From positions 62,001 through 126,000 of the IMG/VR virus record IMGVR_UViG_3300025141_000016: a stretch of DNA of 64,000 bases; one strand, 5' to 3'. The notes below the pieces were generated by a model that made no database searches, was not told the DNA's origin, and saw only the letters and a list, made by a program, of their open reading frames with translations. The position numbers were made by a program, and so were the translations under genes. Each line of letters begins with the position of its first letter. The first letter of the stretch is position 1. Shown one piece after another: positions 9,802-62,803 of this stretch.

Positions 9802-9969
9802 ATGCGCCACCTCTCTATCCATGACCTCCAAGGGGATACACACCGTCGTTGGGCAGATGCCCGCAAGGGGATGTATCGCCAGATTCTACGGGATCCGTCC
9901 GTTTCGGACCATCAGAAAGAAACGGCACGACGCAAGCTGGCAGAGATTGATGCACCCCGTCGCCGGTAG
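9802..9969 (+). CDS. Small hypothetical protein (55 aa, MRHLSIHDLQGD...)
   Basis: Translated by eye (below the ORF-track cutoff). Fills the gap just after the 9798 stop. Confidence 0.45.
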   Translation: MRHLSIHDLQGDTHRRWADARKGMYRQILRDPSVSDHQKETARRKLAEIDAPRRR

Positions 9970-9978
9970 TCCGGCTAT
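9964..9978 (+). promoter_or_regulatory. Class L (putative late) motif CGGTAG-N5-CTAT
   Basis: CGGTAGtccggCTAT upstream of 10042; the motif recurs about 12 times. Confidence 0.6.
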
Positions 9979-10041
9979 GAGCCCTCCGGGGGTAAGGGTG
10001 AGGCACGCCTCGGCTCGGCATCATCTTCGGAGATAAAGATC

Positions 10042-13000
10042 ATGGCACAGGATTTCGGAAGCGGCGTTAGCCGAACCTTGTCGGCACTGGAACGGCAGTT
10101 CCAGACTGTCGTATGGCAAGCATCGAAGCCGCCGCTTGATTCCGAACTCAACCTGATGGCACAGGTTGATTGGGAGCGGGCGGCGAACATCGTGCGCTCC
10201 CAGATGCACTCGGGGTTCCTACTGGACCCCATGGGTGCAGACATGGACTTCGTGACATCCACCGGTTGGTCAAACTGGTTCAAGATGGGACGTACCACCG
10301 CGACAGATGACCACCCGATTATGTGGGCCAATGTGAATGGCTGGGTTCTGCCCATCACAGGGTCGGGAGTCTCGGACGGCGACGAGTCCAACCGTATCAA
10401 TCTCTGGCCACCCCCCTCGACTGATGCCCGCATCGACTTCGTGTTCCTTGAAGTTTGGATGGCGCAGATCGCCCCGAACCCCAGCACCAGCAATAAGCCC
10501 TCTGCGAGTACCATCTACCGCTTCGGAAACACCGAGTATGGTGGGTCCAACGTCACGGATGAGATGGAAGACCCGGCTATCGGGTTTGAGACGACCGAGC
10601 GGTGCCAGTTGCAATACCGTCTCCGTGTCGTCGGAAGCGGCACAGGTCTGGGGGACTCGGTTGACCTCGCCCAATACCCGGATGGTTTGGATGACCCCAA
10701 TGTCGTCGCCCAGGGAGCCATGACGGAAGCCGTTACGGGCTATGCGTGGACGAACATGGGGGATACTTTGAGTGACAAGGGGCTCTGGCGTTCCGGCAAC
10801 GGAGACTCCACGAGCCGCACGGATCTGGGAACGGTGGATGGCTACTCCTATGCCATCCCTGTGTGTGCCATCTTCCGGCGCAACACCAACCCTTTCGTGG
10901 CCGTGACCTCTTCGGGAAATGCCAACCAGAATGGGAGCCTCAACCGCAACCCCACCTCTGCTTCGATTACCACTCCCGTAGAAGCCACGCGCAGCTTCAA
11001 GCCTGTCACCCTCACGGCTGATCTTGCTGCTGACGGTGTGGGCAACATCGCGGTGACCGGACTTTCGGATTCAGGACTCGACAACACGAACATTGATTGG
11101 ACTTCCATGGCCCTCATGCTGGATGACGAGATCATCGTCATCGAAAGCGTGGACGTGTCTGGTGGGACCATCCAGATCGCTGACCCCACAGGGGCCTCGG
11201 CTATCCATGGCCGGGGGCGATTCGGAACCATGGCGGTTCCTCATGTCGCAGGCACCTCGATCCAGTTCTTCAACTTCCGACCTGATGGGCGGTATGCGGA
11301 TGAGATCGCCTCCGAGGACATTCTCGACCTGCGTCGGGGCGTCACCGCAGGGGAATGGTCTTACGAGGATGTGCTGAAGCACAACCTTGGACGGTTGCTT
11401 ACGGGCAACCTACGGACCTCTTACAAGCAAGGGAATGGCACCGACACGCAGGGGCTCCAGATCCTTGAAGTGGACACCTATCTCGGTAAGGGCACGGGAA
11501 CTCTCCCGAACCAGACCGAGCAGTTGGATGGCTTTGACGGCATCCGTACTGTCTTCACGGATGCGGCCACGGTTCAGAATGACGTGTCCCTCCTCTTGTC
11601 TCCGACATCTGGTGGTGGTGGTAGTCCTACTTCCGTGAGTGACTACACCTCGTCTAACGACTGGGAAGCGGCGGCAGGATTCCTCCCCGCTGGGTTCCAA
11701 CCCGACGACCGGGGATGGACAAACGGCACAACCGTTGAACTCTACCTGGGAGGGGCAGCCGGAACCGATGGGGCTCGCGCCACGTCTTCTACAGGCGACA
11801 TGTTCATGCGTTTCGTGTCGCCCCAGGAATACTGGCTGACCCGTGATAGTTGGCCCGGTTTTGCCGGGGGCACGGGACCGTTGCACGGCAACCAGAGCCC
11901 GTTTCTGCTCCGGTTCATTTCCGAGGCTTGGAGCAATCCGGCAGGGCGGGGGGAAAACCCGACCGACCACCCTGGTCCTATGTACCCCCTTCCCGAAACC
12001 AACTTTGAGCGTCCGTTCATCGTTCTCGGTGGCCTCGCCAACACGAACATGAGGGACACTTCCGGTACTACTGTGGTGACCGGGCCGCTGAATGAAATCC
12101 GCTTCCAGAGCGTGGGCTTGGACTTTGACACTGGGGGCCAATGGTGGGATGGCATCGAGATCGAGACCCTATCGTTGACCGGCATCACCAACACCCTCCT
12201 GCACGGGAAACGGAACCTGTACGACTTGCTGACCGCAGGGGGCATTGATCATACCGGCGCATCCTCCGAGTTGTATGTGGTCCTCTCGGGCGATACGACC
12301 AATGGAGGCAACACTGGGTGTTTCCGAGTTGTAGGGGCCGGGGCAACAGCCACGTACACCTCGCGCAACGCATCCACCTCGGATGCCCTCCTCATTGAGC
12401 GGGTGGGCGAAACGGCGGGGGCCTTTGTTACTGGTCGAACCGTCACTGTTGAAGCCCGTACCCAATACATGAACACCGGGGACAGCCCAGGGTCGGCAAC
12501 GGCTTCGGCAGTCATCGTCATTACCGACATTGAGGGTGTTGGGGGTGGGGTCGCGAACCCCTGGCACGGGGATGTGACTACCTTTAGCGCCAGTGATCTC
12601 GTCATCGACACCAGCATCCTCTATGGACCCTCGCGTGGTGCGATGGCCCGAGTGGGCGATGCCTTGTCCCGCTATACGGTTGAGAACCCGGCTGGGGAGA
12701 TCATGCTTCGGGAGGCTCCCGAGGACGTTGATCCTGACTCCACGGCGTTCCGGTCGCGTACCGGAGTCCCCGAGAACGAATACTATTACCCACCCCAGCC
12801 CATCCAGGCATGGAACAGGCTCCCCAGCCTGGGGATGCACTCGCCCGACGCACCTGCTTACGGGAGTGGGCGATACAACTTTGAGACACTTCGGGAATCC
12901 GAGTTGTTCGCGGATGAAGGGTCCAAGACCGTTGTGTTCCGACCCTTCCAGCAAGTGAACATGAGCCTGCCGTTGCGGCTTGCCACAAGCGCCCAGATCG

Positions 13001-15378
13001 GCACCTACACCGCTGGGGGCAACATTGATGGGGGCAATCTCTTTGGGGGGGCCTCCACGCTCAATGTGCTTGCAGTCCCTCCCGAGTACATGCCTCGGTT
13101 TGGTCGGCAGGACATTCCGATTCGCGCAACGGCTGGGACCAGTGGTCCGTATATTGGGCTCAACCATCTCTTTGGGGATTCCGCGACAAGCACCGATAAC
13201 GTCTTCGACATTATCGGCGGCCCCACCACCACTACGACCCTCGGTCTGGTGACCGGGGCAACTTCGGGATTCACCTACGGTGACTACGGCGCAATCACTG
13301 GCACTCTGAACGGGTATCAGGGGCGGCTTTACGAAGACGTGAACGCACGGTCAGCAGACTTGAATAAGCCTCTCCGGGCTATCCAGTTGCCCCCCAACCT
13401 CGGCATCGTCCGGGTTTACGGGGTCTACGACTACCGGGACTATGTGACCGGTGCGAATGGGTCAGCTTGGACCGACAACGGGTTCACGCCGGACACGGGT
13501 GCGGCAGCAGGAACAAACCTCCTTCGCACGGATGCCTCCAAGCAAACCATGTTCATCCTCAAAGGTGGTGCGGAGGATGTGACCGGCAACGCCGGGGACC
13601 ACACCTACATGATCCCAGAGGAGGCCATCGACATTTCGCTGTCGCCTGACTACACCGCAGGGGACACGTTCAACTCGATGGAGTTCGTGGTTGAGATGAC
13701 CGTCTTCGGCTTTGCCCGTGGGTTCATCGACAGCAACAACTACGTCATGCTTCGGGCAGATTCTACCGCCACAGTCCCGTCAGTAGTGTCCACCGTTCGG
13801 ATGATTCTGCCGATGGCGGCTCCGGCTGCTGTTCGTGGCTATTCGGTGTACCTCCGTACCGTCTATCAGGGTGATCCCTACATGACGCGGGATGGGGCGA
13901 CCATTCAGGTTGCGGATTACGAGCATCGGTATGGGCAGGTCGCTGTGGACGATGGCTTCGCGGTCAATGCCCCCCTCCAGCAATACACGACGGATAACCA
14001 GCAGATCCCCGAGATCCCCAATGCTCGGTCTTTGGAGATCCTGGCGAGTGTTGACTTCTGGACCACCCTCGGGACTGGCAAGATGGGCGGCCCCGTCAAT
14101 GCAGGAACCATGACCGATCCCGGCTTCCTGGGAAGTGTGGGGTCACGTCTTCCGGCGACTGCTACGGACAACCCCTACCAGCCCGAAGTGCGTGCTTTCA
14201 CGGCTCCCCAAACGGAATCGGCTCCAGCCGCGCAGATGATTATCCACATCTCGGATAACAGTCTCTTGACGACGGAACTGGTACGGATTGAACGAGCCGT
14301 TGGGCCGACTACCGCTACCGCGATCTTCGCGGGAATAACGTGGGTGGGGGCCAACGCAACCACTTCAGCCGCGAACCTCGCGGGAATGATCAACGCCTCT
14401 GACGTGGCCGGGAGAGTGATTGGAGTAGGGGCTGTGGCGGTTGCCAACGAAGTCCATCTTTTCAGCCTTGTGCCGGGACATACGGGCAACAGTACAATCG
14501 TACTGATCGATCCGGCTACGGGGAATCCGGCCCCCCTTGGGATTTTCCTGCGTCCTCCTGCTCCGATGGGGAAGAAGACGTTTGGTATGCCGATCTTCCG
14601 ATCCCACTTGGTCGGGGGAGAGAATCTTCCCATGAACGCGAATCTCGACTGGAACGCGACCACGCCCGTCAACTTGACGGGCATGACTGACCGACTCCCG
14701 CTGGGCATCTTGGTGAACGACTCTGACTTCATCGGGGAAGACCCCATGCTGGGAGGGAAAGCCTACAACGTGAGTTCAGGTGGGGGCACACAGTCCACTA
14801 CAGAGGTGATTCCGTTTGCCCCCGATGGCGAGGAATATGCTCGCCTCAACGGCAACGCAGGCACCATGGGGATGGCTGATGGGGCGATCCTTGAATACAC
14901 CGCGTACAACGCCGCCAGCGCACACGACGGGACCAAGCAGTTCCGTCTGTACCGGGGCGGTGGTTCGGCCTATGTGTTGGACTCTGTTGCTGGAGGTCCA
15001 GTGGACTTCTCTGTTGGCGGGTTCCCAGAGAACATCGACCCTGTGGTCAAGGGAGCCGTCCTGACGGGACGCGCCTACCTCGTCCGCAACCAAGCTGAAA
15101 CAGCGTTCGCCGGAAATGTGACTCGCTCCTACGGGGACGAGGTGCAGATGGTGGTCGTCACCAGTGCGGTCTACGGAAAGGGTGCTCTCTGTGGAGAGGG
15201 GTACTCCCTCGACGGGATCATCAGCCCGACCGACTACGGCAAGGGGTACTCCGCGTCTGACCGTTACCGGCTGGAAGGGAAACCGCTCGTCAAGGGACGT
15301 GCTGCACTCCCCGACCCGGACATTGAACTCGCTCCGTACCCACCCGAGGATCCGGCAGACGACGATCCTTGCCCGTGA
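10042..15378 (+). CDS. Giant virion structural protein (tail/baseplate-associated)
   Basis: 1778 aa; N-terminal VVWQASKPPLDSELNL and RIDFVFLEVW blocks; paralogous to 2..2053; T/G/S-rich. Confidence 0.7.
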   Translation: MAQDFGSGVSRTLSALERQFQTVVWQASKPPLDSELNLMAQVDWERAANIVRSQMHSGFLLDPMGADMDFVTSTGWSNWFKMGRTTATDDHPIMWANVNGWVLPITGSGVSDGDESNRINLWPPPSTDARIDFVFLEVWMAQIAPNPSTSNKPSASTIYRFGNTEYGGSNVTDEMEDPAIGFETTERCQLQYRLRVVGSGTGLGDSVDLAQYPDGLDDPNVVAQGAMTEAVTGYAWTNMGDTLSDKGLWRSGNGDSTSRTDLGTVDGYSYAIPVCAIFRRNTNPFVAVTSSGNANQNGSLNRNPTSASITTPVEATRSFKPVTLTADLAADGVGNIAVTGLSDSGLDNTNIDWTSMALMLDDEIIVIESVDVSGGTIQIADPTGASAIHGRGRFGTMAVPHVAGTSIQFFNFRPDGRYADEIASEDILDLRRGVTAGEWSYEDVLKHNLGRLLTGNLRTSYKQGNGTDTQGLQILEVDTYLGKGTGTLPNQTEQLDGFDGIRTVFTDAATVQNDVSLLLSPTSGGGGSPTSVSDYTSSNDWEAAAGFLPAGFQPDDRGWTNGTTVELYLGGAAGTDGARATSSTGDMFMRFVSPQEYWLTRDSWPGFAGGTGPLHGNQSPFLLRFISEAWSNPAGRGENPTDHPGPMYPLPETNFERPFIVLGGLANTNMRDTSGTTVVTGPLNEIRFQSVGLDFDTGGQWWDGIEIETLSLTGITNTLLHGKRNLYDLLTAGGIDHTGASSELYVVLSGDTTNGGNTGCFRVVGAGATATYTSRNASTSDALLIERVGETAGAFVTGRTVTVEARTQYMNTGDSPGSATASAVIVITDIEGVGGGVANPWHGDVTTFSASDLVIDTSILYGPSRGAMARVGDALSRYTVENPAGEIMLREAPEDVDPDSTAFRSRTGVPENEYYYPPQPIQAWNRLPSLGMHSPDAPAYGSGRYNFETLRESELFADEGSKTVVFRPFQQVNMSLPLRLATSAQIGTYTAGGNIDGGNLFGGASTLNVLAVPPEYMPRFGRQDIPIRATAGTSGPYIGLNHLFGDSATSTDNVFDIIGGPTTTTTLGLVTGATSGFTYGDYGAITGTLNGYQGRLYEDVNARSADLNKPLRAIQLPPNLGIVRVYGVYDYRDYVTGANGSAWTDNGFTPDTGAAAGTNLLRTDASKQTMFILKGGAEDVTGNAGDHTYMIPEEAIDISLSPDYTAGDTFNSMEFVVEMTVFGFARGFIDSNNYVMLRADSTATVPSVVSTVRMILPMAAPAAVRGYSVYLRTVYQGDPYMTRDGATIQVADYEHRYGQVAVDDGFAVNAPLQQYTTDNQQIPEIPNARSLEILASVDFWTTLGTGKMGGPVNAGTMTDPGFLGSVGSRLPATATDNPYQPEVRAFTAPQTESAPAAQMIIHISDNSLLTTELVRIERAVGPTTATAIFAGITWVGANATTSAANLAGMINASDVAGRVIGVGAVAVANEVHLFSLVPGHTGNSTIVLIDPATGNPAPLGIFLRPPAPMGKKTFGMPIFRSHLVGGENLPMNANLDWNATTPVNLTGMTDRLPLGILVNDSDFIGEDPMLGGKAYNVSSGGGTQSTTEVIPFAPDGEEYARLNGNAGTMGMADGAILEYTAYNAASAHDGTKQFRLYRGGGSAYVLDSVAGGPVDFSVGGFPENIDPVVKGAVLTGRAYLVRNQAETAFAGNVTRSYGDEVQMVVVTSAVYGKGALCGEGYSLDGIISPTDYGKGYSASDRYRLEGKPLVKGRAALPDPDIELAPYPPEDPADDDPCP

Positions 15379-26352: not shown

Positions 26353-26895
26353 ATGAGTAACATCTTCATCACCGACCAAGACCCCCGTGAGTGTGCTGAC
26401 ATTCTTTCGGACCAGCACATCCGTTCCCAACTGGGCACGACCGCCCGAACCCTGGTCGCGGCTCTGCGGGAGCGTGGAATCACAGGACCAATGCTTCCCC
26501 CCACCAAGATGGAGTCTCCTTTCAGCCAGTGGGCGGCAAAGGGCTGGGACAACTTTATGTGGCTTTCCTTCCACGGGATCGCTTTGACCGAGGAGTACCA
26601 TCGTCGCTTTGATGCCATCCCCCCAACGAGCGCCCCCGTCTTGGTGGCAGGGCAGATAGGGCATCTCATGTCGGGTGGGGTCTTCGACTTTCCAATGAAC
26701 TGGCCGTGGTCTGACGCGGCCAAGAGGCACGCCAAGTCGGGGAGTGTGTTCTCGGCCTACCAAAATGCGCTGCGGGACAAGTACGAGACATGGTGTGAGG
26801 AGGGAGAGATGCCCACTTGGACCAATGCCTACCCCCCTTCCTGGCTGGCGGATACCGGTGAAGTCTTGCTCTGGACAGACGACCTTTCTTCATAG
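26353..26895 (+). CDS. Pyrimidine-dimer DNA glycosylase-like protein (possibly degenerate)
   Basis: MSNIFITDQDPRECADILSDQHI..., WL...GIALTEEYHRRF, and a W...PPSW ending, all typical of the family. Confidence 0.65.
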   Translation: MSNIFITDQDPRECADILSDQHIRSQLGTTARTLVAALRERGITGPMLPPTKMESPFSQWAAKGWDNFMWLSFHGIALTEEYHRRFDAIPPTSAPVLVAGQIGHLMSGGVFDFPMNWPWSDAAKRHAKSGSVFSAYQNALRDKYETWCEEGEMPTWTNAYPPSWLADTGEVLLWTDDLSS

Positions 26896-26896: not shown

Positions 26897-26911
26897 CGGT
26901 AGGGCGGCTAT
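26897..26911 (+). promoter_or_regulatory. Class L motif CGGTAG-N5-CTAT
   Basis: CGGTAGggcggCTAT upstream of 26940/27263. Confidence 0.6.
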
Positions 26912-37121: not shown

Positions 37122-37176
37122 AGGGCCGATAGGCGCTCGCTGCCTTTTGTGGCGGTAGAGCGGCTATCGGCCCTTT
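37122..37176 (+). terminator. Long hairpin (probable terminator) overlapping a class L motif
   Basis: Outer stem AGGGCCGATAG/CTATCGGCCCT; inner CGCTC/GAGCG and GCTGCC/GGCGGT; followed by TTTCTCT. Confidence 0.55.
37153..37167 (+). promoter_or_regulatory. Class L motif
   Basis: CGGTAGagcggCTAT upstream of the baseplate operon. A CCAT variant lies at 37100-37114. Confidence 0.6.
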
Positions 37177-41853: not shown

Positions 41854-42156
41854 GTGGAGAAATCACCCTTACAATCCAAGAAGTTCCTCGCCTTCCTGCT
41901 CTCCGAGGTGACGTGGAAGATCATCATCATCGTCTGCGTGGTGAAACTCATTGATGACGCGGAAGGGGGACCACTCCTCCTCCACTGGGTCATGCTCACC
42001 GCAGTTCTCATCGCAGGGTTCATCGAGGCAGGATTCATTGGAGGACAAGCGTGGCTCGACAAGTACGTCCGTCTCGCCAAGATCACCACGGAGGCGGCAA
42101 CAGGAGCACCATCCCCCGACCCAGACCCAGAGGGTGCTGGCTCCAGTGATCGGTAG
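41854..42156 (+). CDS. Putative holin
   Basis: SKKFLAFLL N-terminus, two or more TM segments, directly before the endolysin. Confidence 0.6.
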   Translation: MEKSPLQSKKFLAFLLSEVTWKIIIIVCVVKLIDDAEGGPLLLHWVMLTAVLIAGFIEAGFIGGQAWLDKYVRLAKITTEAATGAPSPDPDPEGAGSSDR

Positions 42157-42179
42157 GTTCAACTATAGGAAGGTGAGTA

Positions 42180-42862: not shown

Positions 42863-42877
42863 CAGTACCTACCCTAT
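42863..42877 (+). promoter_or_regulatory. Class L motif
   Basis: CAGTACctaccCTAT upstream of 42906. Confidence 0.5.
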
Positions 42878-42905: not shown

Positions 42906-43835
42906 ATGCCCACAAAGAAAGAGATTGAGATGGTCCATCTCGTTCAGAGCATCATCGAGAAGCCCGAAATGAGGAGATACCTAAAGAAGCACTACCAAAA
43001 GTCCATCGGGGAGGGGGCACACCCACACACGGGTTTTTGCAGCATGGCTTCGGATGCGCTGCGCCGTATTCTTGGGGGCCAAGTCCGGGGATTCTCGGGC
43101 TACAAACTGTGCCGCGTGGTGCATGAAGGTGAGCCCCACTATTACCTCACCACCCCTTCGGGAGAGGTGCTTGACCCCACGAGTTCCCAGTTCAAGAAAC
43201 GACCTCCTTATGATCGAGGGCGGGGAGTAGGGTTGCCCACCCCCAGTCGCATCCCTGGAACTGATGTTCAATCTCCTACACAGGGGGCGCGGGCAATCAT
43301 GGAGCACCGACGCAGATCCTCATCCTCTGGCCGGTATCCACCCTATCGAGGTCAGGGGGGTAGGAGAAGTATTATGAACCCTGACCGCTCGGCTCTCATC
43401 CGATTGGCCTCGGCGTTACCTGTCGGGAACGCAGACAGGAAGACCATCCTTACGGGGTTGACCTCCAGCCCATTGAGGACACGCCAAGCAGGGCGGGTTC
43501 CTTCCAACGCCCCAAAGCAAGTGAAGCAAGTGGCGAAGGCTTGGGTCCAGAGTGCCATCAAGGCAGGTGAGGAAGTGATCGCAGAGGAAGGGGAAACCGG
43601 GGCCGAGGCCAAGGGCACCCGTGGGTTCTGGAAGGACCGCCTCTATGTGTATGTTGAGGACTCCGACAAGGGTCCGCGCTGGGTCGTGGGGGACAACTAC
43701 GACCGAGCCACGAACATGATCTACTACCCCGATTCTGATGAGTGGTACTCGATGCCCAGCTATGGGTCAGAAAGGCTCATGCGCGGGGGTTTCCAAAACG
43801 CCTTGGGCAGCGCCGAGATCATCTGGACGGGCTGA
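42906..43835 (+). CDS. Papain/transglutaminase-like (Cys-His-Asp) domain joined in frame to a DRSALIRLAS-leader protein
   Basis: GFCSMASDAL...PHYYL...VLDPTSSQF. Internal AGGAG RBS and ATG at 43374 (MNPDRSALIRLAS). Confidence 0.6.
   Translation: MPTKKEIEMVHLVQSIIEKPEMRRYLKKHYQKSIGEGAHPHTGFCSMASDALRRILGGQVRGFSGYKLCRVVHEGEPHYYLTTPSGEVLDPTSSQFKKRPPYDRGRGVGLPTPSRIPGTDVQSPTQGARAIMEHRRRSSSSGRYPPYRGQGGRRSIMNPDRSALIRLASALPVGNADRKTILTGLTSSPLRTRQAGRVPSNAPKQVKQVAKAWVQSAIKAGEEVIAEEGETGAEAKGTRGFWKDRLYVYVEDSDKGPRWVVGDNYDRATNMIYYPDSDEWYSMPSYGSERLMRGGFQNALGSAEIIWTG
43332..43346 (+). promoter_or_regulatory. Class L motif internal to ORF 42906
   Basis: CGGTATccaccCTAT, then AGGAG and ATG 43374. Confidence 0.55.
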
Positions 43836-44175: not shown

Positions 44176-44190
44176 CGGTCGGGAGTCTAT
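44176..44190 (+). promoter_or_regulatory. Class L motif
   Basis: CGGTCGggagtCTAT upstream of 44220. Confidence 0.5.
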
Positions 44191-45092: not shown

Positions 45093-45574
45093 CCAAGCCT
45101 TCCCCCAGCCGTGTAGCCTCCCGTTACCGAGAGGCCGCGATCACCTTTCGGGATGAGAGTTCGCCCCGTGTGCAGTACGCCCGACGGTTCTCACTGTGTG
45201 ACTCGGAAGCAGACCCACCCCGCAAGCGTGAGTACCTGTTCACGGATGAGTACCGAACCCACAACCGCAAGACATACAAGCGGTTGAAGAAGCCGGTGCT
45301 GGAGAGCCGTGGGGTCACCGACCCTTGCGACGTTGCCTACATCGACTACGGCGGGGGCGGGAAAGACCTGTATCTTCATCTGGTGATCACGCGAGAAGAC
45401 CACCGAGGGAAAGGGCTCGCCACAAGGCTACTCAAAGAGTTCTACTCCAAGAAGGTGCCCAAGGGAGCGGTTGTGCGCTGGGGTCGCATTATGAACCCAA
45501 CCAGCATGGCTCTGTTTGAGAAGATGAAGAAAGCACGCCCCGATGTGGTTCACATGGGCGGCAAGTTCTACTGA
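45089..45574 (+). CDS. GNAT-family acetyltransferase with N-terminal PSPSRVASRY tag
   Basis: LYLHLVITREDHRGKGLATRLL; NPTSMALFEK. Confidence 0.75.
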   Translation: MTKPSPSRVASRYREAAITFRDESSPRVQYARRFSLCDSEADPPRKREYLFTDEYRTHNRKTYKRLKKPVLESRGVTDPCDVAYIDYGGGGKDLYLHLVITREDHRGKGLATRLLKEFYSKKVPKGAVVRWGRIMNPTSMALFEKMKKARPDVVHMGGKFY

Positions 45575-46488
45575 CTTGCTCGTAGTCGCCATTCCCCTGC
45601 TACCTCGCGGATGAGGCGCAGCATCCTGGCGATGAGGTTGGGGTTGGACTTGGTGAGTCGCGCAATCTCGGACTTCCGGTAGCCCTGGACCATCAGGCCA
45701 ACGCACTCATGGGAGAGGGTGGCGCACATCCCTCGTTCGGTGGCCCGACTCCCGACCATGGTCATCAGCCCATCCGTGAGGGTTTGGAGGTCTGTCTCGT
45801 CTTCCTGGGAGGGGCCGACTATGGCTATGTCTGCACCCGCAACGTCCTCTATTACATCATCGAGCCCTGGGACTCCGAAGACCTCGTTGCGCTCCAGGCG
45901 AGAGTACCGACGACGGTAGTTGGATACGATGCACCCACACACCATGTGGACATAGTGCCCGAAGGAACTCTTGCGGGGGTCAAAAGGGCACTTCCCACCA
46001 TTCCGCACAAGTAGGCCCTTGTAAATCTCTTGCAGCACATCGTCCGGGTCGTAGCCGTACTTGATGACGCGCCGACCGTATCCCGCATAGAACAGTTTTC
46101 GGACCTCGTGTCCCCGCTTCTCCAAGTCAATCCCCAAGGGGGCAACGGGAGCCTCAATGGAGAGGACACGGCTGGTGCGGATCATCGCCTTGGGTTTGAC
46201 AACCGTGAGGTCAGGACGATTCTTGAAAAGCCGGAGGGTGTCAATCGCAGGCTCGGGGGGCCGATAGGTTCCCTGGCGGAAGTAGCGATCAAAAGTGACC
46301 TTGGGATCACGGTGATGAGATCGAGGCTTGGGGTCTTGGTTGACCAACGCCATGATGGTCTGTCGAGCGGAGGGGTATCTCACCGATCCGTTGGGCCACG
46401 AGACGAGAAAACCATTGGTATCGGCCAACACGCGATGACCCCCATGTTCTGTGCGTGCGTAAAAGGTTCCCTCTGTCCTCATCAACAT
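45568..46488 (-). CDS. Phage-encoded sigma-70 ECF-like RNA polymerase sigma factor with N-terminal extension
   Basis: Region 2: DPDDVLQEIYKGLL...FDPRKSSFGHYVHMVCGCIVSNYRRR. Region 4 HTH: GYRKSEIARLTKSNPNLIARMLRLIR. Confidence 0.75.
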   Translation of the reverse strand: MLMRTEGTFYARTEHGGHRVLADTNGFLVSWPNGSVRYPSARQTIMALVNQDPKPRSHHRDPKVTFDRYFRQGTYRPPEPAIDTLRLFKNRPDLTVVKPKAMIRTSRVLSIEAPVAPLGIDLEKRGHEVRKLFYAGYGRRVIKYGYDPDDVLQEIYKGLLVRNGGKCPFDPRKSSFGHYVHMVCGCIVSNYRRRYSRLERNEVFGVPGLDDVIEDVAGADIAIVGPSQEDETDLQTLTDGLMTMVGSRATERGMCATLSHECVGLMVQGYRKSEIARLTKSNPNLIARMLRLIREVAGEWRLRASQ

Positions 46489-46585
46489 ACGATCTTCCTC
46501 CTCATCAGCGTAGATAGTGGTATCACAGTACCGACTTCCAGGGAAACCTTACCCCCTCATACAAGCCCTCAAAGGGGCGATGTGT

Positions 46586-46600
46586 CGATAGTGGTCTTAT
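46586..46600 (+). promoter_or_regulatory. Class L motif
   Basis: CGATAGtggtcTTAT upstream of 46676/47482. Confidence 0.55.
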
Positions 46601-55944: not shown

Positions 55945-56695
55945 GCCAAGAGTTCTTTTACATCTCAAACGAATCTCAACACGCCTTTCGGGGCGTGGCA
56001 GAGTGAACCCTTGCTGACGGGTTCCCAAACCGATGTACCCTTGCCGGGTCGTTGGCTCCCTCGGGAGATAGGCAGAACCCCGATTGGGAAGGTGGCCTTC
56101 ACAGGTCATGCCGCCCAATCTGTGAGGGGGGACGAGTTATGCGGTGTGGAAACCGCGAGAACCGTCCAGTGTCCCGGCGCATGAGCCGACGTTCCACCGT
56201 CGGAGTGCTGCAAAGGGAAGTCCCGTACTTGTCGGTTCAACGGGACAACGGTTGCAGGGCACAAACCATGACGAAAGTCTTGGGAAGGGGGTCGTTCCCC
56301 AGAATCGGACTGCTGAATGCAGAAGCCTCTCTGGTCATCGGGGCAACTTGGTGGCCGTCCCGAAAGGGGGCAACTGGCGATCTTCCCAAGGGATCAAAGG
56401 TTGTCGTGTGAAGGGTTGGGGAAGGTACACTCCACAACCCGGAGCGCAGAATGTAGGCAGCAGTATCGCGTGCTGTTCCGTCGTAGGAGACTGCGAAGAA
56501 CAGGGAGGAACGCTGTGAACCGTTTTACTTACGGGTGTTCACACTCCTAACCCGAGAGGGGACAGGCTCAAAAGGCTTGGAGGTCACGGCATGGGAGCAG
56601 GCCGATGTGCTGCTTGTTTGTTCCCTTATGAGGGGGTCATCCGAAAGGGTGGCCCCCTCCCCCTTTCACAGTCGCCCGAGAGGGCGACTTTTTTT
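55945..56695 (+). ncRNA. Large structured non-coding RNA candidate (~750 nt)
   Basis: No credible CDS. More than 15 hairpins, with GAAA/GCAA/GAGA/UUCG tetraloops and many G-U pairs. Bounded by a promoter motif and an intrinsic terminator. Confidence 0.75.
56670..56695 (+). terminator. Intrinsic terminator
   Basis: AGTCGCCC-GAGA-GGGCGACT followed by a T tract. Confidence 0.88.
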
Positions 56696-56702: not shown

Positions 56703-56737
56703 GGGGGGTTCAACTCGCCCCGGTATCTCCGTATAAG
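56703..56737 (+). promoter_or_regulatory. Class E promoter
   Basis: GGGGGGTTCAACTCGCCCCGGTATCTCCGTATAAG. Confidence 0.8.
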
Positions 56738-56757: not shown

Positions 56758-57528
56758 ATGACCCGAACAATAATCATTGGCGACGTTCACGGAATGTTGC
56801 CCGAACTGGAAAGCCTCTTGGGGCGACTCCAACCTACGACGGACGACGAGGTTGTCTTTGTCGGTGACCTCGTGGACAAAGGCCCCGATAGCGTTGGGGT
56901 GGTCCGGCGAGTGCGCGAACTGGCCGACACGGTGCCTGTGGTGCTCGTAGAGGGCAACCACGAGGACAAGCACCGACGGTTCCGTAAGAACCTGACCGTG
57001 CGGCCCGAAGTGGCTGCGGGTCAAGCCGAGCGGCAACCTGAACTGGCTACCATCACGGAAGGCTTGTCCGAAGAAGACGTGGCTTTCCTCGACGGTGCGG
57101 TCATGTTCCACCGAGTCCCCGACCATGGGGTGCTCGTGGTTCACGGTGGCATCCCTGGCGATATGGTCGAGTTCCCAGCCACCCCCGAGGAAGCCGCTGC
57201 GTTGACAGGCAAGGCCAAGAGAGCACTGTCCAAGACCCTGCGGACACGCTACCTTTCGGGAGAGACTGGCAAGTTTCTCCAGTTGGGCAAAGAGGGACCG
57301 GAAGACCCGTTCTGGGCCGGGGTCTGGGATGGGCGGTTCGGGCACGTTGTCTTCGGGCACGAGCCTTTCCTGGCTGGTCCCGCATTGTTCCCCCACGCTA
57401 CTGGTGTGGATACGGGAGCGGTGTTCGGTGGATCGTTGACGGCCTTGGTCATTGACGATGCGGGTGAGCGGTCCTTCGTGTCCGTCCCCAGCCGTCCAAT
57501 GGCTCCTTTCCGCTTCATGCTGACATAG
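56758..57528 (+). CDS. Calcineurin-like metallophosphoesterase (ApaH/PrpE/Pnkp-phosphatase-like)
   Basis: IGDVHG, VGDLVDKGP, GNHE, VHGG, VFGH, GVDTGAVFGGSLTA. Confidence 0.92.
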   Translation: MTRTIIIGDVHGMLPELESLLGRLQPTTDDEVVFVGDLVDKGPDSVGVVRRVRELADTVPVVLVEGNHEDKHRRFRKNLTVRPEVAAGQAERQPELATITEGLSEEDVAFLDGAVMFHRVPDHGVLVVHGGIPGDMVEFPATPEEAAALTGKAKRALSKTLRTRYLSGETGKFLQLGKEGPEDPFWAGVWDGRFGHVVFGHEPFLAGPALFPHATGVDTGAVFGGSLTALVIDDAGERSFVSVPSRPMAPFRFMLT

Positions 57529-57544: not shown

Positions 57545-57572
57545 AGCCCTCCCTCCGGGGAGGGCTTTTGTT
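57545..57572 (+). terminator. Intrinsic terminator
   Basis: AGCCCTCCC-TCCG-GGGAGGGCT then TTTGTT. Confidence 0.7.
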
Positions 57573-57575
57573 GTA

Positions 57576-58006: not shown

Positions 58007-58021
58007 CGGTGGCTTCGCTAT
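58007..58021 (+). promoter_or_regulatory. Class L motif
   Basis: CGGTGGcttcgCTAT upstream of 58054. Confidence 0.5.
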
Positions 58022-58356: not shown

Positions 58357-58609
58357 GGTATGCGCTGCGTGCCTTGTGGTCGTCACCATCCTGACTGCGA
58401 CCAACTTCTACAAGTTGTGGGTGTGCCATGCGCCAGCGGCAGCGAACGCCACCGAGCCTGTGCCTGAACCACCGCAGGAAGTTGACCCCACACAGCAGTT
58501 AGACCGGAAGATGGACCAACAGACTCAACTCCTGTTGGAGATTCATCAAGACATGGATGAGGTCAACTCCAACCTCAACGAGATTCAAGTCATCCTCAAA
58601 GATGAGTGA
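58313..58609 (+). CDS. Single-pass membrane coiled-coil protein
   Basis: Hydrophobic CAACLVVVTILTA, Pro linker, coiled coil; start uncertain. Confidence 0.55.
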   Translation: MGDWMKSATCFSTGKVCAACLVVVTILTATNFYKLWVCHAPAAANATEPVPEPPQEVDPTQQLDRKMDQQTQLLLEIHQDMDEVNSNLNEIQVILKDE

Positions 58610-58639
58610 CCGGGTACGGTGTGACTCGGAGGCATAATC

Positions 58640-58957
58640 ATGCAAACCCCTACGACCGAAGCAACCCCCACGAACCCCACTCCCACCACCGAAAACGGTA
58701 GTGAGAATGGATCTTACGGCGAACTCGCACCAGAAGTGCTCAACGCTGTGACCCAACTCCGTGCCCGTAGCGAGGCCCTTGTGGCCGAGGTCGGTAGGAT
58801 GGAGATCCACAAGGCCGCTCTCACCCGTGAGGCTGTCGAGATCAACCAAAAGGCGCAGAGTCTTCTCCAACAGGAAGCCCAGCGTCTCGGAATCCCCAAC
58901 GGAACCTCGTGGCGGCTCACCCCCGAGGGAACCGCGATGGCTGTCGAGGACCGGTAG
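58640..58957 (+). CDS. Hypothetical coiled-coil protein
   Basis: GGAGG RBS. Confidence 0.65.
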   Translation: MQTPTTEATPTNPTPTTENGSENGSYGELAPEVLNAVTQLRARSEALVAEVGRMEIHKAALTREAVEINQKAQSLLQQEAQRLGIPNGTSWRLTPEGTAMAVEDR

Positions 58958-58966
58958 GCTGACTAT
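58952..58966 (+). promoter_or_regulatory. Class L motif
   Basis: CGGTAGgctgaCTAT upstream of 59011. Confidence 0.6.
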
Positions 58967-59010
58967 CGCTCCACAGGGGTATCAAGACCCTTCGTCGGGG
59001 AGGACCAGCT

Positions 59011-59739
59011 ATGTCCCGCACCTTTACTGCCGCTGACCGTTCTGCTCTCATCCGCCTTGCTTCCACACTCCCCGTGGGAAGCAAGGAACGGAAGGCTATC
59101 CTCCGTGGGTTGGTCAAGGTCGAGGCCAAGACTGCCAAGACCGCCATGGCCTTCAAGCTCCCCCATTTCCCCATCAAGGGAAAGGGGGACAAGGTGGTGG
59201 TGATGAAGCCTTTTGAGGCTGGGACGGAACCCTACGCGGGGGGGATGGTGCAAGGCCGTAAGATCAAAATGCGTCCCGGCAGCGTTCCAAACGGGTTCGT
59301 CATCGACATGATCAAGGGCTACAAGTCGAACCCATCATCTGCCATGATGGACCAACTCGGTCCCGCTGCGTGGCAGAACGATGAGCCTGACCAGTACCTT
59401 ATCAACTTCGGCGGCATGAAGGTTTACGTCACCGAAGATGACTGGAGAGACAAGAAAGTCATGGCTGTGCCGCCTCCGAAGGAATGGAGCACAAGCCTGC
59501 TCAAAGCATCCCAAGATGATCTCATGGAAGTCTTACGGGAGGAGATGGGGGTAGCTAATGACTACTCCTCCCGCACCCTGTGGCTTCACAACCCCAAAGA
59601 GGTCGCGAAAAAGTGGGATGAAGCCCACGGGCGGGGAGCATGGGGCAAGTTGTTGGTGGACAACCTCGTTCGCCAGTTGGGCGGTGAGTTTGAGGCCGAC
59701 GTTATGAAGTTCATTCGGGAAGAAGCCCGGAGCATGTAA
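59011..59739 (+). CDS. Hypothetical protein with DRSALIRLAS leader
   Basis: MSRTFTAADRSALIRLASTLPVGSKERKAILRGL...KTAKTA. Confidence 0.7.
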   Translation: MSRTFTAADRSALIRLASTLPVGSKERKAILRGLVKVEAKTAKTAMAFKLPHFPIKGKGDKVVVMKPFEAGTEPYAGGMVQGRKIKMRPGSVPNGFVIDMIKGYKSNPSSAMMDQLGPAAWQNDEPDQYLINFGGMKVYVTEDDWRDKKVMAVPPPKEWSTSLLKASQDDLMEVLREEMGVANDYSSRTLWLHNPKEVAKKWDEAHGRGAWGKLLVDNLVRQLGGEFEADVMKFIREEARSM

Positions 59740-59747
59740 GGCTGGTC

Positions 59748-59762
59748 CGGTATCTGGCCTAT
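59748..59762 (+). promoter_or_regulatory. Class L motif
   Basis: CGGTATctggcCTAT upstream of 59797. Confidence 0.6.
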
Positions 59763-59796
59763 GGTTCCCGACCAGTATGACTGACGGGAGCCAACC

Positions 59797-61896
59797 ATGA
59801 CGACAGGGTGGGAACCAGTTGACGGCACATTCCCTTGGCCTCCGGCCAACGGTACGGCCATGTCTGCGTTCCACAGTTCGGATACCGACATTCGTTGGGA
59901 CGATCCCTCTACCCTCATCACAGGCCCCACCACTCCCTCTACACGGGCTACGGTGTCGGTCACGGTGGCGGGGATTCCTGACGTACTCACCGCCGCTACA
60001 GCGTCCTTTACAGTGGTCGGGGCTCCCATCACGGCAGGGGACACCATCGAGGTAGGTGGGGTTGTCGTGACTGCCGTTGCCGGTGTGCCTGGGGTGGACG
60101 AGTTCGACGGTTCCTCTGGTGTGGTGGCGACCGTTGCCACCAACATCGCTGCTGCCCTCAACGATGGCAGCGTCGGAGGATGGGGTATCGCCACCGCCGA
60201 GGCTGCACTCGGGGTCATCACCCTTACCGCAGGAACGGCAGGCGAGGCTGCAAACAGCACGACTCTTTCGTCGGACTCGGCTCTCATCACCGCATCTGGG
60301 AGCACGTTCTCTGGTGGTGCTGACCCCGACACCCTTACCATCGGGGGCGAGGTGCTGTCAGCGGTTACCACACGCACAGCGGGGGGCATGGACTTCGCAG
60401 TTGGCCCCTCCAACTTTGACACTGCCCAGAGCATCACCGATGCGATCAACGACTCGGACAACACGTTGGGGTTCATCAGCGCCACCGTATCGGGTGACAT
60501 AGTGCTCATCGCCGCGTTCCTCGACGGGACGATGGGCGATGGGATCATCATCTCGACCACCAATACGACCGCCCTGGTGACCAGTGACTCGCAGACCACC
60601 GGGGGAGAGGGAGTTGCCTGCACTGGGAAGTCCAATACCGTGTGGGAGATCCTTGGGGTCAACGTCTACCGGTCGGACACTGGGGAGCGAGGCCCCTATT
60701 TCCGGGTGAACAGCATCCCTGTGATGACCAACTTCTACCGGGATCGCACCGATGTTGTGGAAGTGACCGGCGAGGGGATCGCTTGGGCTACGGGGTGGGT
60801 CTTCCGAGGGAGTGCGCCGAACCAGCCCAATGTGTGGCGGCTCCGGGTCAAAAACCATGAGATGGTCAAGCGAACCGGGAACGCGGTTGCGGCTGACTCC
60901 TCCTTCGATGTGGAGGTTTACATCGACGGAGCACGGGTGCCGGTTGCCCAGGTATCGGGGTCAGTGGGGGAGATCACTCTCGACACCATGCCTGTTTGGA
61001 ACCAAGGCACGGATTCGTGGGATGAGTTCACGGCCCCCACAGACACCAGTTCGGTGACGGTCAGCTACTTCTGGAAGCGTGGGAACAAGCTGGTCAACAC
61101 CCTCGACAAACGCTCCAAGGTCTTCTATCGACTCACCACCGTTGCCATCGACACGTCGAGCACGACGGGCTTGATCGAGACACCGATGGGGTACTCGGAA
61201 CCCATCTCTCCGATGAACAGCGAGAAGATGGACTACATCTGGCGTGAGGCCATCCGGCGCAACCGCTGGATTCTGGAGCAGGGGGGCGAGAGGGTCAAGT
61301 TGTTCATCCGGCGTATCACTGGGGTCAAGTGCGACTGCATCTGGGATCCCAGGCTGGAGGAATACTCCCAGCAACCCCTGAACTCTTGCGTGAAGTGCTA
61401 TGGCACTGGCTGGCGCGGGGGGTACGAAGGCCCCATCGACATTATCGTCGGACCAGACGACACCGAACGGCGAGTGACGCAGACGGCCAATGGACGGCAG
61501 TTGCAGCATCAGTACGAGGTCTGGATTGGACCGACCCCCACGGTCAGCCAACGGGACTTCATCGTCAAGCAGAACGGCGAACGCTACAGCATTGGGCCTA
61601 CCCGCCGCACCCAGGTCCGTGGGGTCATCCTCCAACAGTCCTTCCAGATCGGCTACCTCGACACCACCGACATTCGGTACAAGGTGCCGATGGGCCAGTT
61701 GGAACGACTGCCTTGGCCCCAGACTCGGTACACTCGACCGGAAGACGCGCCCTGCAAGACCGCTGAACCGTATCCGGTGGGGTACGACTACCAAGCATCC
61801 CCCATGGGGACAGAGGTCAACAAGATCGATGATGCTCGTGAGCAGCGGGGTCGGACTCCCGTGTGGGCCAACATCACTTATGGCGGGGGTGGGTAA
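59797..61896 (+). CDS. Putative virion structural protein (head-tail/neck-like) with C-terminal Zn-finger domain
   Basis: T/G/A-rich duplicated domain (TITV/IGG...F...TAxxIxxAIND); C-terminal CDC...CVKCYGTG, RDFIV. Confidence 0.6.
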   Translation: MTTGWEPVDGTFPWPPANGTAMSAFHSSDTDIRWDDPSTLITGPTTPSTRATVSVTVAGIPDVLTAATASFTVVGAPITAGDTIEVGGVVVTAVAGVPGVDEFDGSSGVVATVATNIAAALNDGSVGGWGIATAEAALGVITLTAGTAGEAANSTTLSSDSALITASGSTFSGGADPDTLTIGGEVLSAVTTRTAGGMDFAVGPSNFDTAQSITDAINDSDNTLGFISATVSGDIVLIAAFLDGTMGDGIIISTTNTTALVTSDSQTTGGEGVACTGKSNTVWEILGVNVYRSDTGERGPYFRVNSIPVMTNFYRDRTDVVEVTGEGIAWATGWVFRGSAPNQPNVWRLRVKNHEMVKRTGNAVAADSSFDVEVYIDGARVPVAQVSGSVGEITLDTMPVWNQGTDSWDEFTAPTDTSSVTVSYFWKRGNKLVNTLDKRSKVFYRLTTVAIDTSSTTGLIETPMGYSEPISPMNSEKMDYIWREAIRRNRWILEQGGERVKLFIRRITGVKCDCIWDPRLEEYSQQPLNSCVKCYGTGWRGGYEGPIDIIVGPDDTERRVTQTANGRQLQHQYEVWIGPTPTVSQRDFIVKQNGERYSIGPTRRTQVRGVILQQSFQIGYLDTTDIRYKVPMGQLERLPWPQTRYTRPEDAPCKTAEPYPVGYDYQASPMGTEVNKIDDAREQRGRTPVWANITYGGGG

Positions 61897-62474
61897 TGCC
61901 AGCGCCAAGGCTGTTCCACACTACATCATGGAGGGAAGCTGAAAAGGCGTTGAAGACAGGCAAGATCACCAGCATCTCTCCCTTCATCTCCTTGTCCGAG
62001 AAGCCCCTGTTCGGGGGAGACATTCGCCACGGCGACGTGGCTCTGGTCCTCGATGCGGGTGGGATCAAAGGTCAACTGGTCAAGGTGGAGTACACCGAGC
62101 GTTGGGCCGAAGCCAACCCCGAGCAGACTTCCTACATCGCAGGCGAGGGGTGGCGAGAGCAGTTCACTTACCCAGAGGACTGCGTTGACGAGGAAGGCTG
62201 GGAAGACGACGAGTGCATGGAACGGGCGTACCACGAGGCCGAGGTTGACTCTTTCCTTTGGAAATCCGACGAAGCTGAATGGCTCACGAAGCGGGAGGGC
62301 GCTCCTCTCTCTGTAGGCGGGGCAATCACGGGGCTTCTCGTCCCCGATGAGCGCAGCAAGGGACACGCGGAATCACTCATGGGGGGTCTTGGGCTGGACT
62401 TGCCGGTATTCATAGGGAGAGGAGCGTCGGCTGTGCGTGTTGCAAAGCGGTTTCTTCTGGGAGATGCCGCATGA
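61896..62474 (+). CDS. ART-fold-like protein with C-terminal ASAVRVAKRF tag
   Basis: LFHTT...ISLSE...VALVLD...DEAEW. Confidence 0.5.
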   Translation: MPAPRLFHTTSWREAEKALKTGKITSISPFISLSEKPLFGGDIRHGDVALVLDAGGIKGQLVKVEYTERWAEANPEQTSYIAGEGWREQFTYPEDCVDEEGWEDDECMERAYHEAEVDSFLWKSDEAEWLTKREGAPLSVGGAITGLLVPDERSKGHAESLMGGLGLDLPVFIGRGASAVRVAKRFLLGDAA

Positions 62475-62767
62475 CTGCTACTGAAATCCTGAACCAACTC
62501 CAGCAACACAACCCCGAGGCGCTGCTCTTGGAGCCCCGCGAGGTCTACGACAAGGCTCTGGTTGGGGTCACGAACACCCCTGACGACCATTGGCCGCGCA
62601 CTAACGGCATCTGGGTAGCGGTGTATGACGAGGAACTGTGCCTGGAAGCCATCATGGAATGGCATGAGTGTGGTTACAGCGATGCCGCTGACTGGTTCGG
62701 CCACAACACTTCCGGGGCATGGGCTGGGGAGGGCACTCCGACGTTCCGCTCACACGGCGAGGAATGA
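62471..62767 (+). CDS. Conserved-type phage hypothetical protein
   Basis: YDKALVGV...AVYD...DAADWFGHNTSGAWAGEGTP. Confidence 0.7.
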   Translation: MTATEILNQLQQHNPEALLLEPREVYDKALVGVTNTPDDHWPRTNGIWVAVYDEELCLEAIMEWHECGYSDAADWFGHNTSGAWAGEGTPTFRSHGEE

Positions 62768-62788
62768 CCCAGAGCGCCCCCCTCGGGG

Positions 62789-62803
62789 CGGTACTTCCTT
62801 TAT
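62789..62803 (+). promoter_or_regulatory. Class L motif
   Basis: CGGTACttcctTTAT upstream of 62830. Confidence 0.55.

What the first reader, a model, noticed from the sequence alone, without database searches (positions are those of the whole stretch)
9964..62803. Class L motif CRRTVB-N5-YTAT before structural, lysis and tagged-cargo genes (candidate late promoter)
Seen: copies at 9964, 26897, 37153, 42863, 43332, 44176, 46586, 58007, 58952, 59748 and 62789 (N5 spacing), plus an N6 copy at 42151. All lie just upstream of + strand starts. Most are followed 13-14 nt later by a TA/CA/TG dinucleotide, often GTA. Downstream genes are virion/baseplate, lysis, membrane or tagged proteins, and none overlap with class E targets. 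Caveat: in three copies CGG-TAG doubles as the upstream stop codon. Inference: a compact late promoter unlike the T4 TATAAATA type.
Basis: partly seen in the sequence, partly recalled or inferred. Interest (0 to 1): 0.68.

Follow-up and report, generated by a model that had tools for sequence, protein, structure and literature searches.

The report
Compact late-type promoter of huge phage
A short two-block DNA word (CGGTAG, five free bases, CTAT) marks about fifty gene starts in this marine huge phage, mostly tail, baseplate and lysis genes, and is most likely a phage-specific promoter whose layout fits none of the textbook bacterial or phage promoter types.

Summary
The motif is real. The window has 12 matches on + and 0 on -, against 2.7 expected. 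The whole 297-kb phage record has 50 forward and 5 reverse. Of 60 sites that pass a weight matrix, 54 lie in the 8% of the genome that is intergenic. They point at a gene start, mostly 37-63 nt away. Enrichment survives intergenic shuffling and removal of copies that could be stop codons. Unbiased dyad discovery ranks it first. It is kept at orthologous genes in relatives with 65-75% DNA identity. A weakened core, TAG-N5-CTAT, survives in a distant 485-kb phage. Targets include tail sheath, baseplate, a tail-fibre-like protein and two endolysin-like proteins, but also helicase-, topoisomerase- and ParB-like proteins. Start codons at exactly +29/+30 without a ribosome site, plus a conserved GTA, place the likely transcript start 15-16 nt after CTAT. 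That leaves no recognisable -10 element. The best reading is a phage-specific late-type promoter. The reading factor is unresolved. I favour a conserved protein with two sigma-region-4 domains, encoded beside a NusG paralogue, over the sigma factor in the window. No RNA data exist. The N6 copy and the 42863 copy are doubtful.

The parts
9964..9978 (+). Class L site (20.0 bits). GTA with A at 9994. Lies 78 nt before the 1778-aa tail-fibre-like gene 10042-15378.
26897..26911 (+). Class L site (19.5 bits), just after the stop of gene 26353-26895. Precedes a 108-aa ORF and a ParB-N-like protein of 671 aa (my start call) or 737 aa (longest ORF).
37153..37167 (+). Class L site (17.3 bits). Precedes the operon of sheath-initiator-like protein (392 aa), baseplate wedge (1154 aa), a 100-aa ORF and an M23 peptidase or endolysin-like protein (224 aa). 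Conserved at the orthologous place in G004, L047 and L050.
42863..42877 (+). Weak class L-like site (10.6 bits), 43 nt before the ATG at 42906. Membership is uncertain.
43332..43346 (+). Class L site (17.5 bits) inside the long frame 42906-43835. Lies 42 nt before the in-frame ATG at 43374, which has a strong ribosome site.
44176..44190 (+). Class L site (15.3 bits), 44 nt before a 290-aa ORF of unknown function.
46586..46600 (+). Class L site (14.6 bits), divergent from the sigma-like gene. A class L site divergent from the sigma gene is also found in G004, L047 and L050.
58007..58021 (+). Class L site (15.9 bits) before a 100-aa ORF. Conserved in G004 upstream of the orthologue; L047 carries an identical 15-mer, but orthology there was not checked.
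58952..58966 (+). Class L site (18.7 bits). Its TAG is the stop of gene 58640-58957. Precedes a 242-aa ORF.
59748..59762 (+). Class L site (17.3 bits) before a 699-aa ORF. Absent at the orthologous junction in G004, so sites can be gained or lost.
62789..62803 (+). Class L site (14.9 bits) before a 1005-aa ORF that runs off the window.
42151..42166 (+). Probably not a member: it scores -6 bits, its TAG is the stop of gene 41854-42156, and a ribosome site and a GTG start follow directly.
45568..46488 (-). Sigma-70-family protein of 306 aa, with an extra N-terminal domain followed by sigma-2-like and sigma-4-like parts. It stands under a class M promoter at about 46528-46555 (minus strand). It is a candidate reader of class E, and less likely of class L.

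Best explanation
CGGTAG-N5-CTAT is the upstream recognition box of a phage-specific promoter class. This phage and its marine relatives use it about 54 times, mainly for virion and lysis genes, so probably late in infection. Transcription most likely starts at a conserved A, usually within GTA, 15-16 nt after CTAT. That places CGGTAG at about -30 to -25 and CTAT at about -19 to -16, with no recognisable -10 hexamer. Host RNA polymerase is probably used, because I found no phage polymerase. It would be redirected by a phage-encoded factor. My pick is the conserved 202-aa protein with two tandem sigma-region-4 helix-turn-helix domains (G000:271749-272357). Each domain would read one block, one helical turn apart. 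What is shown: the motif, its placement and its conservation. What is inferred: the start site, the timing and the factor.
For: Statistics and placement. De novo rank 1 among 4+4 dyads. Distance to starts: 48 of the 53 measured sites lie 37-107 nt before the start, most at 40-63. In divergent gene gaps the three motif classes fill 23 of 42 direction slots. In several well-supported gaps class L is the only motif on its side, including a back-to-back pair at G000 226989/226999. Conservation: G004 (65-75% DNA identity) keeps the box at 4 orthologous genes while flanks diverge. L047, L049, L050 and L062 also keep it. In LR745208.1, TAG-N5-CTAT has 26 of 39 copies intergenic, against 4-9 for spacings of 3, 4, 6 or 7. 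Two of those sites sit before orthologues of class L genes. Start site: GTA is enriched at offsets 27-28. ATG stands exactly 14 nt after CTAT, without a ribosome site, at 5 LR sites. The distance is 29 and 30 in L049 and L048, the latter in a divergent gap. No credible site has a start closer than 29. Targets: sheath, baseplate, tail-fibre-like protein, endolysins. Factor: two sigma-4-like domains. The family has 1125 homologues; the best 120 listed are 56-92% identical to the query. The LR orthologue is 50% identical, more than the sigma. A class L site follows the gene directly in G000, LR and L062. Polymerase: no Rpb2-type RNA polymerase domain, and E. coli-type sigma-70 promoters are not enriched.
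Against: There is no transcript-start, timing or binding data. No RNA run holds the phage. The start site rests on start-codon calls for poorly known ORFs. A start at about +24 to +26, with CTATnn acting as a -10-like element, fits nearly as well. Some targets are not virion genes: helicase-like, topoisomerase-I-like and ParB-like proteins. The record is only 67% complete and several giant ORFs are unannotated, so a phage polymerase cannot be excluded. The T7-type search had a control that never rang. A promoter with no -10 element has no precedent for bacterial RNA polymerase with a sigma-70-family factor. The factor assignment is by association only.
Confidence: 0.6

Rival explanations
1. 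It is the same promoter, but read directly by the 306-aa sigma-70-family protein encoded in the window. CTATnn would serve as a -10-like element, the start would lie at about +24 to +26 (the first G of the G-run), and CGGTAG would be an extra element at about -24 to -19, perhaps read by the sigma's added N-terminal domain.
For: The protein is a sigma. Its profile matches sigma-H in the PDB at E = 3.6e-4. Foldseek's top hits are nearly all sigma factors. It stands under a class M promoter, as expected for a cascade. A C-rich stretch followed by a G-run after CTAT suits a discriminator followed by a start. In LR745208.1 the spacing from the -10-like GATAGG of the main promoter class to short-leader ATGs equals the spacing from TATCnn to ATG in class L-like sites.
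Against: The 5-nt gap between the blocks cannot hold sigma-2 and sigma-4 at their usual 16-18 nt spacing. The sigma-2 part is conserved in LR. LR's abundant promoters carry CCGATAGG, close to the CCGTATAGG of class E here, while the -35 parts and the sigma-4 parts both differ. That pairs this sigma with class E rather than class L. The sigma is less conserved than the class L core.
Confidence: 0.2
2. The box is not a promoter. It would be a transcribed loading or pause site, like ops, for the phage NusG paralogue. This antiterminator would be recruited on the non-template strand in front of long late operons.
For: CGGTAG is the core of the RfaH ops element GGCGGTAGnnTG (own knowledge). The phage encodes a NusG-family protein: its profile matches NusG structures at E = 2e-5 (weak Pfam hits). 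That gene lies in a conserved operon next to the two-domain sigma-4 protein. The motif is strictly on the coding strand. It often sits inside operons directly after a stop codon.
Against: The full ops element occurs 0 times, and the two bases before the box are not GG. In LR the CGG part is lost while TAG-N5-CTAT persists. Divergent gaps would then lack any promoter on the class L side. Starts at +29/+30 without a ribosome site suggest leaderless transcripts that begin there. 54 loading sites would be far more than known systems use.
Confidence: 0.08
3. It is an operator for a repressor or another DNA-binding protein, or a site of DNA metabolism such as packaging or recombination, and not the promoter itself.
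For: GGTAG-N5-CTATC is an imperfect inverted repeat, as many operators are. Several sites score on both strands.
Against: The strand bias is strong (50 to 5). Orientation always follows the downstream gene, and the distance to starts is near-fixed. No other candidate promoter was found at these genes.
Confidence: 0.06
4. It is an RNA-level element in the leader, such as a hairpin for processing or translational control, or else an artefact of stop codons and composition.
For: GGUAG and CUAUC could pair across a 5-nt loop. 12 of 54 copies use TAG as a stop codon.
Against: Folds of six sites differ from one another, and their z-scores range from -1.05 to +0.43. When position 5 changes, C11 does not compensate, and the flanking bases do not complement each other. 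There is no Rfam match. Enrichment holds for copies without TAG and against intergenic shuffles.
Confidence: 0.04

Closest known systems
Sigma-54 (-24/-12) promoters, TGGCAC-N5-TTGC
   Same: The block layout is identical: 6 + 5 + 4 bases. GG stands at the same place in the first block. There is no -35/-10 pair.
   Different: The second block is CTAT, not TTGC, so the near-invariant GC is missing. The inferred start is 15-16 nt after the block, not about 12 (own knowledge). The phage record has no sigma-54 DNA-binding domain and no enhancer-binding ATPase. The consensus itself occurs 0 times.
T4 late promoters (TATAAATA read by gp55, with gp33 and the sliding clamp gp45)
   Same: Many short phage-specific promoters stand in front of virion genes, with no -35 element. 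Here the candidate factor gene lies directly after a clamp-loader gene. This recalls T4's link between late transcription and the clamp (own knowledge).
   Different: The sequence and position differ: the box is upstream at about -30 to -16, not at -10. TATAAATA occurs once in 297 kb. No gp55 or gp33 relatives were identified.
Phage-encoded sigma factors: SPO1 gp33/gp34 (CGTTAGA ... GATATT) and phiEco32 gp36 (TAATGTATA)
   Same: In both, phage-coded sigma-family proteins redirect host polymerase to phage-specific words. The phiEco32 consensus and comparable genome-only inference are in PMC4331800. SPO1's CGTTAGA loosely resembles CGGTAG (own knowledge).
   Different: SPO1 keeps a gap of about 18 nt between its two elements, whereas the gap here is 5 nt. 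phiEco32 has a single element near -10.
T4 middle promoters (MotA box at -30 with AsiA)
   Same: A phage DNA-binding protein reads a box around -30 in place of the -35 contact.
   Different: T4 middle promoters keep a sigma-70 -10 hexamer. None is visible here.
RfaH ops element GGCGGTAGnnTG with a specialised NusG paralogue
   Same: The hexamer CGGTAG is shared, the motif is strand-specific, and the phage encodes a NusG paralogue.
   Different: The remaining ops positions are not kept. There are far too many sites, and the placement suits initiation better than pausing.
Small sigma-region-4-like late activators of temperate phages (the RinA family is described in PMC3152322, seen; the ArpU grouping and the sigma-region-4 likeness are from own knowledge)
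   Same: A small phage protein with a sigma-4-type helix-turn-helix turns on the late, packaging and virion operon.
   Different: Those act at one promoter per genome. Here there are about 54 sites, and the protein has two such domains. Family membership was not tested.

Membership tests
Sigma-70-type -35/-10 promoter | Two hexamers separated by 16-18 nt | tested here: not met
   The conserved blocks are 5 nt apart. E. coli-type consensus sites are not above shuffles in the window: 3 against 3.9, and 1 against 3.2.
Sigma-70-type -35/-10 promoter | A -10 element at about -12 to -7 from the start | tested here: inconclusive
   No start has been mapped. With the start at offset 29/30, the -12 to -7 stretch is C-rich and unconserved. 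With a start at 24-26, CTATnn would fit.
Sigma-54 -24/-12 promoter | GG and GC dinucleotides 10 nt apart | tested here: not met
   GG is present, but the second block reads TA where GC is expected.
Sigma-54 -24/-12 promoter | Sigma-54 and an enhancer-binding AAA+ activator are available | tested here: not met
   PF04552 and PF00158 are absent from the 297-kb record. The host is unknown, so host factors could not be tested.
T4-type late promoter | TATAAATA at -10 | tested here: not met
   One occurrence in 297 kb.
T7-like single-subunit polymerase promoter | A continuous conserved 17-23 nt running into +1, plus a phage single-subunit polymerase | tested here: inconclusive
   Conservation is interrupted: 5 free bases inside the box and about 12 free bases after it. 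PF00940 was not found, but its control rang nowhere.
RfaH ops site | The 12-nt GGCGGTAGnnTG on the non-template strand of a leader | tested here: not met
   Only the CGGTAG core matches; the full element occurs 0 times.
Phage promoter class (generic) | Strand-specific, intergenic, at a fixed distance from starts, and conserved at orthologous genes | tested here: met
Phage promoter class (generic) | Transcripts begin at a fixed place downstream of the box | not testable with these tools
   No RNA run holds this phage. The only evidence is indirect: start codons at +29/+30 and a conserved GTA.
Late temporal class | Expression after DNA replication begins | not testable with these tools
   Gene content leans towards virion and lysis genes, but not exclusively.

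The most novel reading that the evidence does not exclude
Late initiation in this clade would need no -10 recognition at all. A protein made of two sigma-region-4 domains would bind the box at -30 to -16 and hold the polymerase by its flap. The co-transcribed NusG paralogue would occupy the clamp-helix site that sigma region 2 normally uses. Together they would form a split, sigma-less initiation factor that sets the start by distance, as TBP and TFB do in archaea. This may be coupled to the neighbouring clamp loader.
Probability: 0.1. Interest if true: 0.9.

Novelty: new variant of a known kind. Interest (0 to 1): 0.6.

Why it matters
Huge phages known only from metagenomes have almost no described gene regulation. 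This work gives a three-class promoter map for one marine clade, with class L driving the virion genes, built from sequence alone. It allows temporal classes to be assigned to hundreds of unknown genes in this clade. It also names concrete factors to test: a sigma, a protein with two sigma-4 domains, and a NusG paralogue. If the inferred geometry holds, with the box at -30 to -16 and no -10 element, it would be a promoter layout not described for bacterial RNA polymerase. The compact 15-nt box with its factor could also serve as an orthogonal expression part.

Tried and rejected
2. Close relatives by protein pattern in viral contigs: none found. Relatives were reached instead through the class E word and through homologues of the sigma and of the two-domain protein. 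Two of those look-ups returned no DNA.
3. Pfam and PHROGs left most class L targets unnamed.
4. GGTA as a -10 element with a start near +41: rejected. Start codons at +29, +30 and +38, and ribosome sites at +26 to +35, lie upstream of such a start.
5. A DxDGD motif in the 1343-aa protein raised the idea of a virion RNA polymerase. Atlas neighbours are baseplate-hub families, so the idea was dropped.
6. RNA hairpin: no consistent fold and no compensation.
7. Complex prediction on the NusG paralogue with the two-domain protein gave no verdict. This is not evidence either way.
8. Iterating the weight matrix at a low threshold drifted. The strict matrix was used instead.
9. Class E-like -10 words in four relatives' 20-kb loci were all in coding DNA. 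The pairing of the sigma with class E therefore rests on two lineages only.
Full report
SETTING. The window is bases 62001-126000 of a 297,104-bp IMG/VR virus record. The record is linear, about 67% complete, has 59% G+C, and carries most genes on the + strand. DNA runs that hold it are marine metagenomes. No RNA run holds it. IMGVR_UViG_3300002514_003933 is the same phage at 99.99% identity, so it is not independent.

OBSERVATION. The 11 listed N5 copies are all there. The twelfth match (25886) is inside a coding frame and scores low. Across the whole record the pattern occurs 50 times forward and 5 times reverse. The core CGGTAG-N5-CTAT occurs 24 forward and 1 reverse, with 0 for a reversed control pattern.

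I called genes with a simple codon-usage model and then ran a blind search for enriched 4+4 dyads upstream of starts. CGGT-N7-CTAT ranked first. A weight matrix finds 54 intergenic sites at 12 bits or more, against 6 in coding DNA, although only about 8% of the genome is intergenic.

The enrichment also holds against dinucleotide shuffles of intergenic DNA alone. Copies with no TAG, which cannot be stop codons, score 15 against 0.43. TAG is the upstream stop codon in 12 of 54 sites.

Distances to the next start are mostly 40-63 nt. The N6 copy at 42151 does not fit and is probably chance.

THREE MOTIF CLASSES. The same blind search gave two more classes.
- Class E has 21 copies. It is a word of about 35 nt: a T-run, then GGGGGGTTCAAC, then TCTCCGTATAGG.
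- Class M has 24 copies: GGGGGT, 17-19 free bases, then GGTA.

In the window, class M precedes a helicase, a DnaB-like helicase and the DNA polymerase. Class E precedes small ORFs and an NAD-dependent ligase. Class L precedes a sheath-initiator-like protein, a baseplate wedge protein, an M23 endolysin-like protein and a tail-fibre-like giant. Elsewhere class L precedes the tail sheath (the best-scoring site), a second endolysin and a baseplate-hub-like giant. It also precedes a helicase-like, a topoisomerase-I-like and ParB-like proteins. No gene has both a class E and a class L site.

In gaps between divergent genes, where each side needs a promoter, the three classes fill 23 of 42 slots. In several gaps class L is the only motif on its side. 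One such gap holds a back-to-back pair 9 nt apart. E. coli-type sigma-70 sites are not enriched.

CONSERVATION. G004 is a 42-kb relative with 65-75% DNA identity. It carries all three classes and keeps the class L box before four orthologous genes while the flanks diverge. One site is absent there. Contigs found through sigma homologues of 47-67% identity keep the box before the sheath-initiator/baseplate operon (L047, L050). L047 and L050 also keep it opposite the sigma gene.

The 485-kb phage LR745208.1 shares 97 of 297 genes but lacks the full word. It does keep TAG-N5-CTAT: 26 of 39 copies are intergenic, against 4-9 for other spacings. Two of these copies stand before orthologues of class L genes.

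WHERE TRANSCRIPTION STARTS (INFERRED). After CTAT comes a C-rich stretch and then a conserved GGTA. GTA starts at offset 27 or 28 in 18 of 54 sites, and A at offset 30 is the most informative downstream base.

In LR745208.1, five sites have ATG exactly 14 nt after CTAT with no ribosome site. In two closer relatives the distance from box start to ATG is 29 and 30, and one of these lies in a divergent gap. No credible site has a shorter distance.

In this phage many sites read GGTAGGAG followed by 7-8 nt and then ATG. That is, the conserved A is followed directly by a ribosome site at normal spacing.

The simplest reading is a start at that A. This puts CGGTAG at -30 to -25 and CTAT at -19 to -16. 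A start near +41, with GGTA as the -10 element, is excluded by the short distances. A start at +24 to +26, with CTATnn as a -10-like element, remains possible.

WHO READS IT (INFERRED). No Rpb2-type polymerase domain, sigma-54 domain or enhancer-binding ATPase is present.

The 306-aa minus-strand gene in the window is a sigma-70-family protein under a class M promoter. In LR745208.1 only its sigma-2 part is conserved. That phage's abundant promoters read TAAA-N15-GCCGATAGG. Their downstream half resembles the CCGTATAGG of class E here, while the upstream halves differ. This pairs the sigma with class E, though only weakly, because it rests on two lineages.

A second protein suits class L better. 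It is 202 aa long (G000:271749-272357) and has two tandem sigma-region-4 domains. It is more conserved than the sigma: 50% identity in LR745208.1, and 56-92% among the 120 best of 1125 homologues. Two helix-turn-helix units fit two blocks one helical turn apart and an asymmetric site.

Its gene overlaps a NusG-family gene and follows a clamp-loader gene. This order is kept in distant relatives, and a class L box follows it directly. A fold of the two proteins together gave no verdict.

RIVALS. CGGTAG is the core of the RfaH ops element, and a NusG paralogue is present. So a transcribed loading site had to be considered. But the rest of ops is absent, the CGG part is lost in LR745208.1, and divergent gaps would then lack promoters. 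An RNA hairpin is not supported. An operator or another DNA site does not explain the strict orientation and spacing.

VERDICT. The promoter reading is well supported by sequence evidence: about 0.75 for 'promoter' and about 0.6 for 'late'. The factor is open: about 0.35-0.4 for the two-domain protein and about 0.2 for the sigma. The layout matches none of the sigma-70, sigma-54, T4-late or T7 types. I rate it a new variant of a known kind.

Noticed in passing
window 33966, 34517, 49450, 51888, 54861, 56706 (+) and 32974 (-); 21 copies in G000: Class E promoter-like word of about 35 nt: a T-run, GGGGGGTTCAAC, a variable C-rich stretch, then TCTCCGTATAGG. The AAC ... CGT spacing of 15 nt resembles ECF-type promoters (own knowledge). 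The G-run and C-run can form a stem. It precedes clusters of small ORFs and the NAD ligase.
   Followed up: partly
window 17324, 26285, 32372 (+) and 46555 (-); 24 intergenic copies in G000: Class M word: GGGGGT, 17-19 free bases, then (C/G)GGTA. It precedes replication genes, the sigma-like gene and the operon of the two-domain protein. Three copies have ATG 10 nt after GGTA.
   Followed up: partly
G000:268202-272357 (outside the window; L045:8202-12357): A conserved operon: Toprim-like protein, phage metallopeptidase, a 118-aa ORF, clamp loader, NusG paralogue (NGN plus KOW), and the protein with two sigma-4 domains. The gene order is kept in LR745208.1 and in three metagenome contigs.
   Followed up: partly
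LR745208.1, about 45 sites, e.g. record positions 11-17 kb and 106-121 kb: This distant 485-kb relative's dominant promoter reads GATTTC-CTAAAAAG ... GTGCCGATAGGG. That is the sigma-28/FliA-type consensus TAAA-N15-GCCGATAA (own knowledge). It is unexpected for the main promoter class of a phage.
   Followed up: partly
window 42906-43835: One open frame has two candidate starts, each with its own class L-like box and ribosome site: ATG 42906 (309 aa) and in-frame ATG 43374 (153 aa). This could yield two nested proteins.
   Followed up: no
window 45568-46488 (-), residues 1-50 of the protein: The sigma-like protein carries a conserved beta-rich N-terminal domain (invariant W31, P32, G34, Y38) that the LR745208.1 homologue, as called here, lacks. 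Its role is unknown.
   Followed up: no
G000:293972-297064 (-) versus G000:121797-132835 (window 59797-70835): The contig end carries diverged second copies of several window genes, including those for the 699-aa and 337-aa proteins. G004 segments align to both places at 72-77% identity.
   Followed up: no
G000:196607-198361 and 4805-4910: A family of repeats of about 100-140 bp recurs every 590 bp or so in four neighbouring gene starts, with one more copy near 4.8 kb (80-89% identity).
   Followed up: no
G000:148094-152125 and 155169-166625: The giant ORFs are virion-type proteins. The 1343-aa protein resembles baseplate-hub families despite a DVDGD motif. The 3818-aa protein is conserved in LR745208.1 (30-40% identity) and remains unannotated.
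   Followed up: partly
window 56670-56689 and 57545-57566 (+): Two strong terminator-like hairpins with T-tails. The first lies directly before the class E site at 56706. The second lies after gene 56758-57528.
   Followed up: no
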